Sequence record: PP968062.1
DNA: 64,000 nucleotides
Reading direction: 5' to 3' (one strand)
Shown here: in pieces, positions 46,401-51,122 of the stretch
Numbering within the stretch: position 1 is the first letter of the stretch
How the letters are laid out: each line of letters starts with the position of its first letter
The notes under the pieces: model-generated
What the model was told of the DNA's origin: nothing
What the model saw: the letters and a program-made list of their open reading frames with translations, nothing else
Database searches by the model: none
Translations under genes and position numbers: made by a program

Positions 46401-48110
46401 ATGAGTGATGATATTTCTTTTAGTAAAGAAGATGTAGTTGGTATCGAAGCTAAACATATTACTTACGTTACCGACCGTAACCATCGCAAGCATGACTTGC
46501 ACGTTGTTAAAGAGGTCATCCATCTTAAGGACAAGCGTCGGATTCCTCGTCTCCGTTTTATTGAGGATTATGAACGTCCTTGGTGGTTGGACCCTGAGGC
46601 CAACAAGAAAGAAGGGCAACGTTCTTACACTGAGAAGAAAGACTACGAATATGAGAAGAAACTCCTCAAACGTAAGTCTACTCAAATTAACATGCCGCAC
46701 GCTATCGCTAAAGCTCTTGGTGATTACAGCATGGGTCCTAACCCACGGATGCGTCAACTGAGTCGTAGTCCTTATCTGTACGGTTCTGACGTTAGCTCTG
46801 TTTGCTATCTGAAGAACGACTATCGAATGGCTGCTCCTGATCTGATCTCTCGTAACACTGTCGCTGGTGGCGACATTGAGACCAACGTTTACGAAGATGG
46901 TAAAGATGGTGAGATCATCTGCATGTCCGTATCGTTTAAAGATAAAGTCTATCTGGCTTATCTGAAACGTTGGGTAAGTGACCTCAAAGATCCTATACAA
47001 GAAACCTTTGATGAACTGGAACGTATCCCTGAGTTGGTTGCTCTTCGTAAGGGACGTAATCTGAACATCGAGATCGAAGTAGTTGATCAACCGGTTCACA
47101 TCGTAATTAACTGCATAAAGCGTCTCCACAAATGGAAGCCTGACTTCTTCTCCTTCTGGAACATCAGCTTCGACATGAGTCGAATCCTGAAAACTCTGGA
47201 AGACGCTGGTGTTGATCCGGCGGTTGTATTTAGTGATCCGTCTGTACCGGCTAACTACAAGTACTTCCACTTCCGTCAAGATCAAGCGATGACCACTACG
47301 GCATCGGGTGTAACCAAGTCTAAAGGTCCAGAAGACCAATGGCACTGGATTACTTGCCCTGCATCTTTCCAACCGATCGATGCGATGTCTACTTACCGTG
47401 TAACTCGTCTGGCTAAAGGTAAGGAACCGTCTTACGCGCTTGATTACATTCTGAAGAAAGAACTCAACGTCGATGAAGATGCTGAGATTCTGGGTGAAGG
47501 TGATCTGGTTAAGTTCCAGAAAGGTCTCGACAAACTGTTAGCTGAACGTCCGGGTAGTTATCCTTATCTGTTCGTTAACTACAGCGGTAAAGAAGATGAC
47601 TGGACTCCGGTTGAACACTTCACTTGGGGTGACACTGTAAACCTGGGTAACCATGTTCGTTACACCATGAACTTTGGTAAGCTTAAGTTCCCTGAAACTG
47701 ATCACCTCGGAGGGATCGAATGGCACATTGAGATGCAGAAGAACCACAAGGTTCGTTATGGTCTTTACAACATCATCGACTCCATTCGTCTGGAGCAACT
47801 CGATGAGAAGATCAATGACCTTGCCAGTTCTATTACTCTGTTCTCGAAGTCTTCCGACTATAAGAACTTTAGCTCTAACCCGAAGCGTCTTTGTGACGAC
47901 ATGCACTTCTGGTATCTGAACCGTCCTGAGCCGTGTGTCATTGGTACTAGCTCTGACCAAATGGTTCACGAGCTCGATCAGTACGTAGTGGGTCACGATA
48001 GCTGGATTGTTACACTGCCTTCTTACATGGCTGGTCCGAACGGATTGAAGTGTGTTAAGGACTTACCTGATTACAAGACTTTGATCTTTAGCCACGTAGC
48101 TGATTTGGAT
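46401..48110 (+). CDS. family-B DNA polymerase subunit with 3'-5' exonuclease domain (phiKZ gp82-like), exon 1
   Basis: GGDIETN (ExoI), FWNISFDMS (ExoII), YNIIDS (ExoIII); ends HVADLD, half of polymerase motif A. Confidence 0.85.
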
Positions 48111-49832
48111 TAAATATACGTAAAGATGATATTTCCTGTTATTGTATACAGGAGATATTAACATGATAAATAATGACATGCGTTACTTACCTCACTCTGG
48201 TCGACGGTATATGGTCAGTCGTTGTGGTAAGGTGTATGATACGAGTGGTATTGAGATAAAGCCTAATGGTGGTAACGTCAGATTAACTTGGTTAAATGGC
48301 GACGATAGTTATTCGGTGGGCATGTTAGTAATTGTAACATACCAGCCTATATACCTACCTGATCACCTTTGGATAAAAATCGAACCTCTTCATCTAGATT
48401 GTGACCCTAACAATAATCATGTCGATAATTTGCGGTATCGTTTCGTAAATGGTAAATTGGAGTATGAAGCAATTCCAGGCTTCTACTATATTCCACATTA
48501 CACCAAATATGTAATCGATATTTACGGAAATATGCTCACTGCTGAAAATGGCAGAGATAAGACTTGGGGTTATGTAAAGTCAGATCTAGAACGTAATTCG
48601 AAAGGTGGATACAGATTTACACGAGTCGTTAATGAACCCGGTGTTAATTCTGTGCTACTTAGACATAGAGCGTTGTGTTTTGTGTTTAAACCAGTTGAGC
48701 GTGCAAGTGATTATGACTTGCTCGTAAACCACATTGATGGCGTACCAGGTAACGATAACTTAGACAATTTGGAATGGGCGACGTATGCAGAGAATAACAA
48801 GCATGCTCACGCCAACGGTCTAAGTGGTGGTAAAGCTAAAGGTGTACTGATGCGTAATATTGAAACCGGTGAACTGAGTAAATTCGCAACCACTAAAGAG
48901 GCGGCGAAAAGTCTTGGGCATGGTTCCAATGCACAAATACGACATCGCTTAAGACATGGTCAAACCATCCACTATCTCGATAATTTACAATTCAAATGGG
49001 ATGATGGTACCGACTGGCTGGATGTGGATATAACCACACCTGCTATTGAATGTAAAATCGGTACAATGATGGCTTCTCGAAATGTCTTAACTGGTGAAGT
49101 CAGAACTTTCGGATCATTTGAAGAAGGTGAGAAATTAACTGGTATTGACAAACAGACGATTGCAATTCATATTCGTGATAATCAGATTGTTCCTTTCCAA
49201 GGTTTTAATTTTGGTTGGTACAAAGAAGGCATGGAATGGCCTATTCATTCTGATATTAACATGAAGGCCTACAAGAAATATCCGACACGTACGCCTGACC
49301 CAATTATTGTGGAAGACATGATACTTGGGGATAAAGTAATCGTGGAAAGTAGGAATGAATTAGCTACTCTTCTTAAGATCAGTCCCAGTTATGCTACTCA
49401 ACTTGTGTCAAACGCAATGATTTATCAGGATAGGTACAAAATGACCTATCATCGTTTACGTGACAACATTTTAGTCCCATCAAGTTGGAATACTTGATGC
49501 AAACTTCTTTAATTGCCGGGGAAATCCTTAGAGACATGTACACCAAATCCATGTAGTGATACATGGACGGCCAGATTAACTACCTGGGTATGGTAAAAGA
49601 GACATGTATTGGGTGATCCGCAGCGAAGCTTCTCTCTGAGAAGAACGTTCAACGACTATCGAAACCACTGCGCAAGCAGACAAGGGAGTAGAGTAGGATC
49701 AAGTGATCCGAAATGGGAAGCATCCGATCCTCGCAAGAGAAGGATGGTGATATAGTCTCCACATCCAGGGAAAGCCTGGAGCAGCACGTTATAGTGCGGA
49801 TAGAGCGTAACGAACTCTATCGAAGATACTGG
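48111..49832 (+). mobile_element. group I intron with homing endonuclease in loop L1
   Basis: 5' exon ends in U, intron ends in G; P 49511, Q 49615, R 49647, S 49749; P7 GACTAT/ATAGTC; splicing restores DLD-IVSTYP in frame. Confidence 0.9.
48142..49497 (+). CDS. HNH homing endonuclease (NUMOD4/HNH plus NUMOD1-like repeats)
   Basis: VNHIDGVPGNDNLDNLEWATYAENNKH; earlier degenerate HLDCDPNNNHVDNL; AT-richer; likely start 48163 (GGAG RBS). Confidence 0.9.
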   Translation: MYTGDINMINNDMRYLPHSGRRYMVSRCGKVYDTSGIEIKPNGGNVRLTWLNGDDSYSVGMLVIVTYQPIYLPDHLWIKIEPLHLDCDPNNNHVDNLRYRFVNGKLEYEAIPGFYYIPHYTKYVIDIYGNMLTAENGRDKTWGYVKSDLERNSKGGYRFTRVVNEPGVNSVLLRHRALCFVFKPVERASDYDLLVNHIDGVPGNDNLDNLEWATYAENNKHAHANGLSGGKAKGVLMRNIETGELSKFATTKEAAKSLGHGSNAQIRHRLRHGQTIHYLDNLQFKWDDGTDWLDVDITTPAIECKIGTMMASRNVLTGEVRTFGSFEEGEKLTGIDKQTIAIHIRDNQIVPFQGFNFGWYKEGMEWPIHSDINMKAYKKYPTRTPDPIIVEDMILGDKVIVESRNELATLLKISPSYATQLVSNAMIYQDRYKMTYHRLRDNILVPSSWNT

Positions 49833-50066
49833 ATTGTCAGTACTTATCCGAACGTTAGCCAGATTCTCAACATTGCTCGGGAAACAACTGTCATGGAATT
49901 CTCCATGATGAAAGATATCTCTGAGCATCATCGTCGAGAAGTAGGGGTGAACTTAACTGGTGGTCGTGTCAACGCTATTGAGATCTGCCAGAAGATCATG
50001 AAAGCTCCGAAGTTGGATGAGATGTTGAAGCTCTACATGGAGAAGAAGGCTAACTCCCCAAAGTAA
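49833..50066 (+). CDS. DNA polymerase subunit, exon 2 (77 aa; spliced product 647 aa)
   Basis: Begins IVSTYPNV directly after the terminal intron G; codon usage like exon 1. Confidence 0.85.
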   Translation: MVSTYPNVSQILNIARETTVMEFSMMKDISEHHRREVGVNLTGGRVNAIEICQKIMKAPKLDEMLKLYMEKKANSPK

Positions 50067-50431
50067 CATATCGATGGAAACGCCGCGGAGGATACGAATG
50101 TTCCTCCGTTGGTGATAAGCGGTTCTCTGCTCTTAATGCTCAAATGCCAGATGGTCGTACAATCGAGATGCACTATCAATGTGACATCAAAGGTTATGAA
50201 CCAGGTGGTACTAATTGGAAGCTTGGTAAAGGTAAACCTCCATTAGCTTCTATAAACTCCTGGGAGGCCTATTACGGGCTTTGGGAGACTTGGGCTAAGG
50301 CAAACCCTGACTTGATGAAAGAACTTCGTATAGGAGCCGATAAGAACGAAGGATATCTTTCTGATGTCTTTGCATCGACTAGTATTTCACAGGCTCGTGC
50401 TCTAGCAGAACTTTTGAACAAAGGCTATTGA
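50057..50431 (+). CDS. NADAR-like domain; no ATG/GTG/TTG before 50144; possibly reached by -1 frameshift
   Basis: In-frame YECSSVGDKRFSAL..DGRTIEMHYQCDIK aligns by eye with YbiA FSNF..DGKTWPTSEHYFQAQK. Confidence 0.55.
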   Translation, partial: PKVTYRWKRRGGYECSSVGDKRFSALNAQMPDGRTIEMHYQCDIKGYEPGGTNWKLGKGKPPLASINSWEAYYGLWETWAKANPDLMKELRIGADKNEGYLSDVFASTSISQARALAELLNKGY

Positions 50432-50470
50432 CAACATATTGCCCGGCTTAAGGCCGGGCTTTATGTCGTT
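50432..50470. terminator. bidirectional terminator
   Basis: GCCCGGC/GCCGGGC plus TTTATGTCGTT. Confidence 0.8.
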
Positions 50471-51122
50471 AAGCTTTACCAATCAAATCTAGAACAGGTC
50501 GCCAACCATAGTTAGCCATACCTGAATCAGCTATTTCGGTCGTGGTACCGATTAGCTGGTTATACCCGCGTGCGCGGTGAAACTGTGGATCAGCAGCGGA
50601 TTCTTCTTGGACCCAGCAAGCACTTCCTACTACAGAGGGAGCACACCCCAATTCAACATTCGTGAAACTAGCTAATACTGGATTATAGTTAGCTGACCTA
50701 CCCACGCCTAGTGGATACATCCAACGCTCCCACTCGCCACCCCAACTTATCGTGTTAGATACAACATTCTTAGTTGTACCGGTCATAACTCGAACACGAA
50801 ACTGATGTCTACCGATTTGGATGATCTTACCAAAGATAAGATCTTTCGCATTTAGTTCAGTCCATCGAATGTTGTTTCTCAATTGCTGTTTAGCAATGTA
50901 GATAAGTTTCCCGTTTTCCACCATTTTTAACCAACCGCCCGCGGTTGCAATAGGCGTACCTTCGGTGATACCAACGAGGTTAGCAAAAGCCAAAGGTCCA
51001 GGTAAGCCTTCTACAAACTCACCATAAAAGCCATGGAGAGAACTACCAGAGATAAGTTCTTGCGGGCCAGGTGGTAATGTGTCATCGTACATCTTAAGTA
51101 CGGAAAGCAATGACTCGAACAT
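50469..51122 (-). CDS. virion protein of the phiKZ gp83/gp131-like paralog family
   Basis: GFYGE, GWLK...GKLIYIAK..LR..I.W, GEWERWMY and C-terminal GWRPVLDL motifs. Confidence 0.7.
   Translation of the reverse strand: MFESLLSVLKMYDDTLPPGPQELISGSSLHGFYGEFVEGLPGPLAFANLVGITEGTPIATAGGWLKMVENGKLIYIAKQQLRNNIRWTELNAKDLIFGKIIQIGRHQFRVRVMTGTTKNVVSNTISWGGEWERWMYPLGVGRSANYNPVLASFTNVELGCAPSVVGSACWVQEESAADPQFHRARGYNQLIGTTTEIADSGMANYGWRPVLDLIGKA

What the first reader, a model, noticed from the sequence alone, without database searches (positions are those of the whole stretch)
50037..50431. Putative -1 programmed frameshift fusing the DNA polymerase subunit to a NADAR-like domain
Seen: the polymerase ends TCC CCA AAG TAA. 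C_CCA_AAG (50057-50063) is a perfect X_XXY_YYZ heptamer, with GGAG 14 nt upstream and a CGGAGGA/TCCTCCG hairpin at 50086-50108. The -1 frame reads PKVTYRWKRRGGYECSSVGDKRFSAL... continuously into the 50144 ORF. That frame has a stop at 50051, no ATG/GTG/TTG until 50144, and no SD before 50144, yet the segment before 50144 aligns with the NADAR N-terminal motif. Known: NADARs remove guanine ADP-ribose added by DarT1, and A_AAG is shift-prone in bacteria. Inference: a fraction of polymerases carry a lesion-erasing domain at the fork. Caveats: the hairpin is farther away than the usual 5-9 nt, and a 1-nt sequencing error or recent indel gives the same picture.
Basis: partly seen in the sequence, partly recalled or inferred. 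Interest (0 to 1): 0.75.

Follow-up and report, generated by a model that had tools for sequence, protein, structure and literature searches.

The report
Frameshift fuses phage polymerase to NADAR
In this phiKZ-like jumbo phage, a gene for a small DNA-repair-type enzyme (a NADAR-like ADP-ribose remover) has no start codon and is almost certainly made by ribosomes slipping back one base at the end of a DNA polymerase gene, a trick conserved in many relatives, including phiKZ itself.

Summary
The window is Pseudomonas phage HPP-Temi, a phiKZ-like jumbo phage.

- **Polymerase gene.** It is the phiKZ gp082 orthologue. It is split by a group I intron rather than being a separate "subunit", and it ends TCC_CCA_AAG_TAA.
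- **-1 frame.** This frame is open from 50054 to 50431 and encodes a 122-aa domain. The domain's most conserved residues lie upstream of the first ATG (50144).
- **-1 arrangement in relatives.** In all 18 related polymerase loci with this arrangement, an N_NNA_AAG heptamer sits in the polymerase frame inside the short overlap: C_CCA_AAG, G_GGA_AAG or A_AAA_AAG. Thirteen of the 18 have no ATG, GTG or TTG in the domain's frame.
- **Other arrangements.** Two contigs separate the ORFs by one in-frame TAG. Two phiKZ-like metagenomic phages encode polymerase and domain as a single ORF.
- **Domain identity.**
  - The three best structural matches are all NADARs (Z 8.7, 7.4, 7.2; next 4.1).
  - A profile chain links it to Pfam NADAR-DarT1.
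  - The catalytic Glu, Lys and Asp are invariant.

Best explanation: programmed -1 frameshifting makes a polymerase-NADAR fusion. I infer that it removes ADP-ribose from DNA. No protein-level evidence exists yet.

The parts
46401..48110 (+). DNA polymerase exon 1 (570 codons; phiKZ gp082 / PHROG 3011 type)
   Evidence: PHROG 3011 'DNA polymerase', E 3.4e-200. Collinear with the intronless HHBS36_1 polymerase to window 48103.
48111..49832 (+). Group I intron interrupting the polymerase at the ...ADLD|IVSTYPN... motif
   Evidence: Rfam RF00028 at 49446-49781, 59.2 bits against a gathering score of 50. Boundaries come from the intronless homologue. Exon 1 ends in T and the intron ends in G.
48142..49497 (+). 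HNH/NUMOD1 homing-endonuclease ORF inside the intron
   Evidence: Pfam HNH_3, E 3.9e-7 (30.1 bits, above its cut-off), and NUMOD1, E 2e-4 (21.9 bits, just under its 22.8 cut-off). Annotated as HNH endonuclease in PP968062.1.
49833..50063 (+). DNA polymerase exon 2 (77 codons, ends ...ANSPK); the spliced zero-frame product is 647 aa
   Evidence: 91% nt identity to the 3' end of the intronless HHBS36_1 polymerase gene. PHROG 3011, E 1.9e-27.
50057..50063 (+). Slippery heptamer C_CCA_AAG in the polymerase frame (proposed -1 shift site)
   Evidence: Identical in phiKZ, PhiPA3, HHBS36_1, Phabio, 201phi2-1, Viktualia, three UViGs and run X2. Replaced by G_GGA_AAG or A_AAA_AAG in other lineages.
50064..50066 (+). 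Polymerase stop codon TAA directly after the heptamer (candidate 'shifty stop')
   Evidence: TAA, TGA or TAG directly follows the heptamer in every C_CCA_AAG and G_GGA_AAG lineage except 201phi2-1, which has one extra codon.
50063..50431 (+). NADAR-like domain ORF in the -1 frame (122 codons from the GTA at the shift site, then the TGA stop); no usable start codon. The predicted transframe product is 647 + 122 = 769 aa.
   Evidence: The invariant residues G10, S14, G17, D18, S22, A23 and A26 lie before the first ATG (50144).
50081..50114 (+). RNA hairpin (core CGGAGGA/TCCTCCG) starting 17 nt after the heptamer; role uncertain
   Evidence: Strong in Temi, PhiPA3, HHBS36_1 and the UViGs (-18 to -19.5 kcal/mol). 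Weak in phiKZ (-8) and different elsewhere. Partly a by-product of Gly-Gly and Ser-Ser codons.
50039..50042 (+). GGAG 14 nt upstream of the heptamer; probably incidental
   Evidence: Present in Temi but not conserved in PhiPA3, phiKZ or the UViGs.
50441..50459 (.). Terminator-like GC hairpin between the convergent NADAR ORF and the minus-strand virion gene
   Evidence: 8-bp stem followed by TTTAT on the + strand, and also scored on the - strand.

Best explanation
The polymerase mRNA is first spliced to remove the group I intron at 48111-49832. Most ribosomes then terminate at TAA (50064) and make the 647-aa polymerase.

A fraction slip back one base on C_CCA_AAG. The tRNAs on CCA and AAG re-pair with CCC and AAA, probably while the stop codon waits in the A site. 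These ribosomes continue with GTA ACA TAT... through 122 more codons. The product is a 769-aa polymerase carrying a C-terminal NADAR-like domain.

The domain has the NADAR fold and the Glu/Lys/Asp catalytic set of the DarT1-associated NADARs, which remove ADP-ribose from guanine in single-stranded DNA. The inferred function is removal of ADP-ribose (or a related base adduct) from phage DNA by an enzyme tethered to a polymerase. Because the polymerase works inside the phage nucleus, the domain would be carried there too.

**Shown:**
- the sequence anatomy;
- the absence of a start codon;
- purifying selection on the pre-ATG segment;
- conservation and turnover of the heptamer;
- natural in-frame fusions;
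- the fold and catalytic residues.

**Inferred:**
- the slip itself and its efficiency;
- the substrate;
- the benefit of tethering.
For: - **Anatomy:**
- **Essential N-terminus.**
  - The family normally consists of stand-alone proteins of about 123-127 aa. Their start lies 3-6 residues before the W.RRGGYECS motif and is preceded by an SD.
  - So the 27 residues before Temi's ATG are an essential part of the domain. Seven invariant columns lie there.
- **Selection on that segment:** dN about 0.05-0.06 with dS 0.8 to saturated, against phiKZ, PhiPA3 and HHBS36_1.
- **Heptamer conservation.**
  - All 18 polymerase loci with the domain in the -1 frame have N_NNA_AAG in the polymerase frame inside the overlap window: C_CCA_AAG x10, G_GGA_AAG x1, A_AAA_AAG x7.
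  - Thirteen have no ATG, GTG or TTG in the domain frame before the GD motif. Noxifer has one only more than 120 codons upstream.
- **Wobble base.** The base before CCA is always C, although the codon encodes S, P, N, V, A or L. It is G before GGA.
- **No SD.** None sits at working distance from the ATG of PhiPA3 or the GTG of HHBS36_1.
- **Single-ORF fusions in phiKZ-like contigs next to a PhiKZ_MCP gene.**
  - P0243: polymerase residues 29-541 plus domain 560-677.
  - P0276: polymerase, then DUF4326, then the domain. It was found in two samples.
- **Other fusions:** the domain is also fused to family A DNA polymerases, RecD/Pif1-type helicases and AlkB.
- **Same-frame case:** two contigs have polymerase and domain in one frame, separated by a single TAG.
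- **NADAR identity.**
  - Structure: VIA-align Z 8.7 (8bat), 7.4 (2b3w) and 7.2 (8bau), against 4.1 for the next hit. An Atlas cluster with PF22397 matches at TM 0.75.
  - Sequence link: hhalign to a Rhizobium phage protein gives 98.7%, E 2.4e-16. That protein passes the PF22397 gathering score.
  - Catalytic residues: E35, K43 and D101 align with the E-x6-K and D-x-E motifs of G. lovleyi NADAR. PMC11543638 section 12 shows the E. coli C7 equivalents of these residues (E88, K95, D171) to be catalytic.
- **No indel:** none at the site in run X1.
Against: - No transframe protein, ribosome-profiling or reporter data were found (literature searches).
- No stimulatory structure sits at the canonical 5-9 nt spacing. 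The hairpin starts 17 nt downstream and is not conserved in phiKZ, Phabio or the 201phi2-1 group.
- PhiPA3 has an ATG, and HHBS36_1, 201phi2-1 and Viktualia have a GTG, at or near the junction. Free domain could therefore be made in those phages.
- In the Psa21/RVTF4 clade the domain is in the +1/-2 frame with no -1 heptamer, and most members have a TTG or GTG start. The -1 route is therefore not universal.
- The window protein itself gives no Pfam NADAR hit, and Foldseek against the PDB finds nothing.
- I did not check which tRNA-Lys species Pseudomonas uses to read AAG. This affects how slippery A_AAG is.
Confidence: 0.72

Rival explanations
1. The domain is made as a free ~14-kDa protein. 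Ribosomes would use translational coupling or re-initiation at the polymerase stop and start on a non-canonical codon (ACA or GTA in Temi, ATA in phiKZ). On this view the heptamer is conserved only because it encodes the polymerase's terminal Pro-Lys.
For: - The family is usually stand-alone.
- PhiPA3 has TAATG and HHBS36_1 has GTGA at exactly this junction.
- Most members of the Psa21 clade have overlapping TTG or GTG starts.
Against: - Thirteen of 18 lineages have no ATG, GTG or TTG at all. The codon at the PhiPA3 ATG position varies freely: ATG, ATA, ACA, ACT or GTA.
- There is no SD at working distance, unlike the stand-alone homologues.
- In the A_AAA_AAG lineages the heptamer lies between 4 codons (L105) and about 30 codons (L055) upstream of the polymerase stop. 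The -1 frame is open from there, which coupling at the stop does not explain.
- The wobble base preceding the heptamer is constrained across different amino acids.
- Single-ORF fusions exist.
Confidence: 0.12
2. RNA polymerase slippage on the short homopolymer runs (A3 or C4 here, A6 in other lineages) yields a fraction of mRNAs one base shorter. These mRNAs would encode the fusion directly.
For: The outcome would be the same fusion. A_AAA_AAG lineages have a run of six A.
Against: - From established knowledge, productive transcriptional slippage normally needs runs of about 7-9 identical bases. CCCAAAG and GGGAAAG have only three A.
- What is conserved is the codon-phased X_XXA_AAG pattern, including the final G, not run length.
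- X3, the one run laid that may be RNA, yielded a single Logan contig covering only 50335-50500, so the site could not be examined.
Confidence: 0.05
3. The arrangement is a decaying gene or an assembly error: a stand-alone gene in Temi that lost its start (or gained a 1-nt indel) and is no longer expressed.
For: Temi's closest relatives (HHBS36_1, PS119XW, PA1C) have GTG where Temi has GTA.
Against: - The full ORF is intact and all invariant residues are kept.
- dN/dS is far below 1, including against other start-less lineages.
- phiKZ, Phabio, five A_AAA_AAG UViGs and others are also start-less.
- Run X1 contigs match the site without gaps.
Confidence: 0.03

Closest known systems
Phage lambda gpG/gpGT tail-assembly chaperone -1 frameshift (G_GGA_AAG), and its conserved counterparts in tailed phages
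   Same: - An X_XXA_AAG heptamer near the end of the upstream ORF.
- The downstream ORF has no start of its own and is expressed only as a C-terminal extension.
- No obligatory stimulatory structure.
- The arrangement is conserved across diverged phages while the exact heptamer varies. Locus L065 uses lambda's own heptamer.
   Different: The genes are a DNA polymerase and an enzyme domain, not tail chaperones. Here the stop codon usually abuts the heptamer. Efficiency is unknown.
E. coli dnaX tau/gamma -1 frameshift (A_AAA_AAG)
   Same: Recoding inside a replication gene. Seven related loci use the same heptamer, A_AAA_AAG.
   Different: - The dnaX shift truncates the protein, giving gamma. 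Here the shift extends it with an extra catalytic domain.
- dnaX has an upstream SD-like element and a stem-loop 6 nt downstream. No equivalent conserved elements were found here.
DarT1-associated NADAR antitoxin (DarG1; Geobacter lovleyi NADAR 8BAT; Pfam PF22397)
   Same: The fold matches (Z 8.7). The Glu-x6/7-Lys motif and the catalytic Asp are present (PMC11543638). A homologue passes the PF22397 threshold.
   Different: - Only 122 aa. It lacks the N-terminal beta1-beta2-alpha1 extension proposed to bind ssDNA; the alignment starts at residue 54 of 8bat_A.
- One extra residue lies between Gln and Lys.
- There is no DarT1 partner gene.
- There is no direct Pfam hit.
AdfN (T4 gp30.3), the phage NADAR that counters DarTG1 (PMC11825919)
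   Same: A phage-encoded NADAR-fold protein. The plausible role is reversal of guanine ADP-ribosylation of phage DNA.
   Different: T4-type NADARs carry His at the third catalytic position (PMC11543638, PMC11825919), whereas this family has Asp, like DarG1. AdfN is a free protein. No sequence-level hit links the two.
AdfM (phiKZ gp104), the nucleus-localised macrodomain that counters DarTG2 (PMC13309987)
   Same: It occurs in the same phage group, is the same kind of countermeasure (removing ADP-ribose from phage DNA), and has the same need to be inside the phage nucleus.
   Different: A different fold (macrodomain) and a different target (thymine adducts). It is a separate gene with its own import, and no recoding is involved.

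Membership tests
Programmed -1 ribosomal frameshift site (bacterial/phage type) | X_XXY_YYZ heptamer phased in the upstream (zero) frame | tested here: met
   C_CCA_AAG lies at 50057-50063 in the polymerase frame.
Programmed -1 ribosomal frameshift site (bacterial/phage type) | The -1 ORF is open across the site, encodes a real protein and lacks its own initiation signals | tested here: met
   Open from 50054. There is no ATG, GTG or TTG before 50144 and no SD. The pre-ATG segment is under purifying selection and carries invariant residues.
Programmed -1 ribosomal frameshift site (bacterial/phage type) | Phylogenetic conservation of the frame relation and of a slippery pattern, with turnover of its identity | tested here: met
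   All 18 loci with the -1 arrangement carry N_NNA_AAG in the overlap window, in three different heptamers at different distances from the stop.
Programmed -1 ribosomal frameshift site (bacterial/phage type) | Stimulatory element at canonical spacing: a structure 5-9 nt downstream or an SD-like element about 10 nt upstream. This is an accessory feature, absent from lambda G/GT-type sites. | tested here: not met
   The hairpin starts 17 nt downstream and is not conserved. The GGAG 14 nt upstream is not conserved. No common structure appears in the A_AAA_AAG group.
Programmed -1 ribosomal frameshift site (bacterial/phage type) | Transframe protein observed | not testable with these tools
   No proteomic or ribosome-profiling data are accessible, and the literature searches found none.
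NADAR superfamily (YbiA-like fold) | Alpha+beta YbiA-like fold | tested here: met
   The model has pLDDT 96.9. The top three of 48,161 chains are NADARs (Z 8.7, 7.4, 7.2; next 4.1). The top Atlas cluster has TM 0.75, and 21% of its members carry PF22397.
NADAR superfamily (YbiA-like fold) | Direct match to a NADAR profile (PF08719 or PF22397) | tested here: not met
   No Pfam hit for the window protein or for any of the 50 aligned members at E up to 10.
NADAR superfamily (YbiA-like fold) | Profile-level homology through an intermediate sequence | tested here: met
   The family profile against the Rhizobium phage RHph_TM2_3B protein gives hhalign probability 98.7%, E 2.4e-16. That protein matches PF22397 at 39.4 bits against a cut-off of 27. 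Its best PDB sequence hit is 8bat NADAR.
NADAR superfamily (YbiA-like fold) | Catalytic Glu and Lys (E88 and K95 in E. coli C7 NADAR) and a third acidic residue (D171) | tested here: met
   E35, K43 and D101 are invariant in 50 sequences. They align with the SVE...SSK and TDIE motifs of G. lovleyi NADAR through. Residue roles are from PMC11543638.
DarG1-type antitoxin (PF22397, DarT1-associated NADAR) | N-terminal beta1-beta2-alpha1 extension and an adjacent DarT1 toxin gene | tested here: not met
   The domain has only 122 aa, and the structural alignment begins at residue 54 of 8bat_A. The neighbours are the polymerase and virion genes.
DarG1-type antitoxin (PF22397, DarT1-associated NADAR) | Hydrolysis of ADP-ribosyl-guanine in ssDNA, and rescue from DarT1 | not testable with these tools
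   Needs a biochemical assay or a toxicity-rescue assay.
Group I intron carrying a homing endonuclease | Ribozyme core above the Rfam threshold; exon junction defined by an intronless homologue; U before the 5' splice site and G at the intron's 3' end; internal endonuclease ORF | tested here: met
   RF00028 at 59.2 bits against 50. HHBS36_1 is collinear across 48110|49833. T at 48110 and G at 49832. HNH_3/NUMOD1 ORF. Splicing itself was not tested.

The most novel reading that the evidence does not exclude
Polymerase-NADAR fusion by recoding may be an ancestral, actively maintained trait of phiKZ-like nucleus-forming phages, reached by interchangeable routes:
- a -1 slip on three different heptamers;
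- a possible -2/+1 event on GAA_AAG_AAG;
- read-through of a single UAG;
- outright gene fusion.

On this reading, the purpose is to carry a minimal DNA de-ADP-ribosylase, which lacks its own DNA-binding extension, into the phage nucleus and to the replication fork. It would ride on a polymerase, at a ratio set by recoding efficiency. This would make it a hidden second anti-DarT arm alongside AdfM.
Probability: 0.35. Interest if true: 0.9.

Novelty: new variant of a known kind. Interest (0 to 1): 0.82.

Why it matters
- **An unannotated protein in model phages.** phiKZ and its relatives are the model nucleus-forming phages and are candidates for therapy against Pseudomonas. Their annotations miss this domain. 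phiKZ lists only a 38-aa fragment (082.1). Temi lists two tiny ORFs, one of them out of frame.
- **A new use of recoding.** A recoding event that adds a catalytic anti-defence or repair domain to a core DNA polymerase would be new for phage replication genes.
- **A candidate counter-defence.** It would add a probable countermeasure against guanine ADP-ribosylation (DarTG1-type systems) to the known anti-DarTG2 factor AdfM.
- **Nuclear access.** It suggests a simple way for a phage to get a small enzyme into its protein-walled nucleus.
- **Support for action on DNA.** The domain is repeatedly fused to polymerases, helicases and AlkB.
- **Testability.** Everything can be tested with standard phage genetics, reporters and mass spectrometry.

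Tried and rejected
- **Direct family searches on the domain found nothing useful.**
  - Pfam: no hit.
  - NCBIfam: no hit.
  - PHROGs: only 'unknown function' family 9995.
  - PDB profile search: a spurious weak uL3 match, E 0.01.
  - Foldseek against the PDB: no hit.
  - Atlas feature search: only low-score, unrelated names.
  - The NADAR link appeared only with VIA-align, the Atlas shape search and an intermediate sequence.
- **A conserved frameshift-stimulating structure was not found.**
  - The Temi hairpin is real, but it lies too far downstream, is degenerate in phiKZ, and is partly explained by Gly-Gly and Ser-Ser codons. Similar pairings occur in stand-alone homologues.
  - Folding 70 nt downstream of 18 sites showed no common element.
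- **The upstream GGAG is not a dnaX-like stimulator.** It is not conserved.
- **Reads of Temi itself were not identified.**
  - No run clearly identifiable as Temi's own was found.
  - X1 holds only part of the stretch and may be a mixture or the source sample.
  - X9 held nothing.
- **Window statistics are uninformative.** Heptamer counts in the window are as expected by chance.
- **The polymerase has no sequence hit in the PDB.** Its identity rests on PHROG and RefSeq annotation, weak family B matches, and the 201phi2-1 annotation note.
- **The literature reports no frameshift here.** Searches for a reported frameshift or polymerase-NADAR fusion in these phages found nothing.
- **The window encodes no tRNA genes.**
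Full report
**Identity and context.**
The window is 100% identical to Pseudomonas phage HPP-Temi (PP968062.1, genus Pawinskivirus), a 303-kb phiKZ-like jumbo phage. The gene upstream of the finding belongs to PHROG 3011 'DNA polymerase'. It is the orthologue of phiKZ gp082 and 201phi2-1 gp144. phiKZ has a second polymerase, gp050, and both are listed as core genes (PMC12571901).

- Rfam finds a group I intron core at 49446-49781 (59.2 bits, threshold 50).
- The intronless polymerase of phage HHBS36_1 is collinear with window 46401-48103 and 49842-50064. Its protein reads ...ADLD-IVSTYPN... across the gap.
- This places the intron at 48111-49832, with T before the 5' splice site and G as the last intron base.
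- An HNH/NUMOD1 endonuclease ORF lies inside the intron.
- The spliced polymerase is 647 aa.

**The observation.**
- The polymerase ends TCC_CCA_AAG_TAA.
- The -1 frame has a stop at 50051 and then runs open to 50431.
- Its first ATG, GTG or TTG is at 50144, and no SD precedes it.
- The hairpin exists at 50081-50114, z -2.7.

The heptamer by itself is not unusual in the window, with 8 copies against about 6 expected. The case therefore rests on comparison with relatives.

**The downstream ORF is a real, complete domain without a start.**
- A search with the 125 residues from 50054 found 481 proteins. Most are 122-130 aa and 60-70% identical.
- Their Met lies 3-6 residues before the motif W.RRGGYECSS.GD.RFSA. 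Stand-alone genes have a well-spaced SD.
- In a 50-sequence alignment, seven invariant columns (G10, S14, G17, D18, S22, A23, A26) lie before Temi's ATG. Initiation at 50144 would therefore delete the most conserved part.
- That segment is under strong purifying selection. Temi against phiKZ shows 17 nucleotide differences in 69, 13 of them at third positions, with 2 amino-acid changes. dN is about 0.05-0.06 while dS is 0.8 to saturated.

**Comparative anatomy of the junction.**
I collected polymerase-domain junctions from GenBank phages and IMG/VR contigs.

| Arrangement | Lineages | Start in domain frame |
|---|---|---|
| C_CCA_AAG, -1 frame (10 loci) | Temi, HHBS36_1, PhiPA3, phiKZ, Phabio, 201phi2-1, Viktualia, three UViGs | ATG in PhiPA3; GTG in HHBS36_1, 201phi2-1 and Viktualia; none in the other six |
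| G_GGA_AAG plus TAG, -1 frame (1 locus) | L065 | none |
| A_AAA_AAG, -1 frame (7 loci) | Noxifer, L055, L077, L084, L086, L101, L105 | none; Noxifer has one only more than 120 codons upstream |

- All 18 loci with the domain in the -1 frame have an N_NNA_AAG heptamer phased in the polymerase frame. It lies inside the short window between the last -1-frame stop and the polymerase stop.
- The rest of each ~590-codon polymerase ORF has 0-4 heptamers of any X_XXY_YYZ type.
- Thirteen of the 18 have no ATG, GTG or TTG anywhere in the domain frame upstream of the GD motif. In phiKZ the first one comes 69 codons after it.
- The codon at the position of PhiPA3's ATG varies freely: ATA, ACA, ACT or GTA.
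- The base preceding CCA is always C, although it is the wobble base of codons for S, P, N, V, A or L. It is G before GGA.
- A metagenomic relative in run X2 keeps the heptamer, changes the stop to TAG and has GTA GTA after it.
- Contig pieces of run X1 match 49974-50098 exactly and without gaps. A sequencing error or private indel is excluded.

**Other routes to the same product.**
- Two contigs (L092, L095) have polymerase exon 2 and the domain in the same frame, separated by a single TAG. The other ORFs of 100 codons or more in these loci end in TAA or TGA.
- P0243 (698 aa) is one ORF with the PHROG 3011 polymerase at residues 29-541 and the domain at 560-677. The polymerase part is 30% identical to the HHBS36_1 polymerase (E 3e-34). 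It sits on a 45-kb contig next to a PhiKZ_MCP gene.
- P0276 (919 aa) was seen in two samples with the same synteny. It reads polymerase, DUF4326, domain.
- The domain is also fused to several other enzymes:
  - family A DNA polymerases (P0293, P0304);
  - RecD/Pif1-like helicases;
  - AlkB;
  - RNase H;
  - SLOG/DprA-like domains and DUF4326.
- It also occurs inside giant multi-domain proteins of 2,000-6,000 aa.
- These fusions show that a polymerase-domain polypeptide is a natural, selected product. They also tie the domain to DNA transactions.

**An exception.**
In the Psa21/RVTF4 clade the domain is in the +1/-2 frame and overlaps the polymerase end by about 20 nt. Most members have a TTG or GTG start, although L032 and L038 have none nearby. 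All share GAA_AAG_AAG. I could not decide between independent initiation and a -2 slip of tRNA-Lys from AAG to AAA.

**What the domain is.**
- Direct profile searches are blank.
- The AlphaFold model is confident, with pLDDT 96.9.
- An exhaustive structural comparison puts three NADARs on top: Geobacter lovleyi NADAR 8bat (Z 8.7), E. coli YbiA 2b3w (7.4) and Phytophthora NADAR 8bau (7.2). The next chain scores 4.1.
- The Atlas shape search gives a phage 'p043' cluster (TM 0.75) in which 21% of members carry PF22397 NADAR-DarT1.
- The family profile aligns to a Rhizobium phage protein with 98.7% probability. That protein passes the PF22397 threshold (39.4 against 27 bits), and its best PDB sequence match is 8bat.
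- Through these alignments the invariant E35, K43 and D101 correspond to the E-x6-K and D-x-E motifs. The paper on DarT1-NADAR shows the equivalent E. coli C7 residues (E88, K95, D171) to be catalytic (PMC11543638).
- The domain is a minimal NADAR. It lacks the N-terminal extension thought to bind ssDNA, and it has no DarT1 neighbour. I therefore file it in the NADAR superfamily, not as a DarG1 antitoxin.

**Mechanism (inferred).**
After splicing, ribosomes reach CCA-AAG with the stop next. tRNA-Pro and tRNA-Lys can re-pair one base back on CCC and AAA.

From established knowledge:
- A_AAG is shift-prone in bacteria (dnaX, IS elements, lambda G/GT).
- A stop codon directly 3' of a slippery run raises shifting ('shifty stops').
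- Lambda's G_GGA_AAG works at a few per cent without a stimulatory structure.

The shifted ribosome reads GTA ACA TAT CGA TGG... and adds 122 residues.

Efficiency is unknown.

The likely benefit is that a fraction of polymerases carry a de-ADP-ribosylase to the template. In these phages the fusion would also be carried into the phage nucleus with the polymerase. The related anti-DarTG2 factor AdfM must be nuclear to protect phiKZ (PMC13309987). T4's NADAR AdfN counters DarTG1 (PMC11825919).

**Rivals.**
- Re-initiation at a non-canonical codon does not fit four observations: start-less lineages, unconstrained 'start' positions, the upstream A_AAA_AAG sites, and the in-frame fusions.
- Transcriptional slippage is unlikely on runs of three A.
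- Pseudogene or error is contradicted by selection, by conservation and by the reads.

**Novelty.**
Searches of the literature found no report of recoding in a chimallivirus polymerase gene or of a polymerase-NADAR fusion. Current annotations miss the domain: phiKZ lists a 38-aa '082.1' and Temi lists two small ORFs, one of them out of frame. The mechanism (-1 frameshifting) and the enzyme family (NADAR) are known kinds, but their combination on a polymerase is new.

Noticed in passing
window 48111-49832 (intron), 48142-49497 (HNH ORF): The polymerase gene is interrupted by a 1.7-kb group I intron carrying an HNH/NUMOD1 homing endonuclease, inserted at the conserved ...ADLD|IVSTYPN... motif. 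HHBS36_1 lacks the intron. PhiPA3 and contigs L092/L095 appear to have introns at the same site; in L092 the intron is short and has no ORF.
   Followed up: partly
window 49609-49755, 50136-50246, 50315-50431 (GenBank CDS0347, 0349, 0350): The deposited annotation places small 'hypothetical protein' CDSs inside the intron ribozyme. It also lists two tiny CDSs over the NADAR ORF, one of them out of frame. phiKZ likewise annotates only a 38-aa C-terminal piece (PHIKZ082.1), and PHROG 33573 is built from such fragments.
   Followed up: yes
L092 and L095, 2156-2881 (TAG at 2498-2500): In two identical metagenomic contigs, polymerase exon 2 and the NADAR-like domain are in the same frame, separated by a single TAG that is preceded by GGAGGA. 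The other ORFs of 100 codons or more in the locus end in TAA or TGA. This may be UAG read-through or suppression.
   Followed up: partly
L023 (Psa21), L024 (RVTF4), L032, L037, L038, L042, L048, L049: about 40-60 nt before the GD motif: In this clade the domain is in the +1/-2 frame relative to the polymerase. All members share GAA_AAG_AAG in the polymerase frame, where a -2 slip of tRNA-Lys (AAG to AAA) would enter the domain frame. L032 and L038 lack a nearby canonical start.
   Followed up: partly
proteins P0162, P0168, P0175, P0182, P0187 and others; P0283, P0324, P0307/P0316: The same domain sits inside giant 2,000-6,000-aa multi-domain proteins. It is also fused to RecD/Pif1 helicases, AlkB, T7-type RNA polymerase fragments (one cluster has 114 members), RNase H, SLOG domains and DUF4326. 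One source names a member 'A1S_2505 family phage non-structural protein'.
   Followed up: partly
window 50441-50459: A GC-rich hairpin followed by TTTAT sits between the convergent NADAR ORF and the minus-strand virion gene (50469-51122). It scores as terminator-like on both strands.
   Followed up: no
window 50090-50115: The hairpin's GGAGGA is followed 5 nt later by an out-of-frame ATG (50098) that opens a 5-codon mini-ORF (MFLRW). It looks like a by-product of the conserved coding sequence, and sequestering this SD-like element could be one reason for the hairpin.
   Followed up: no
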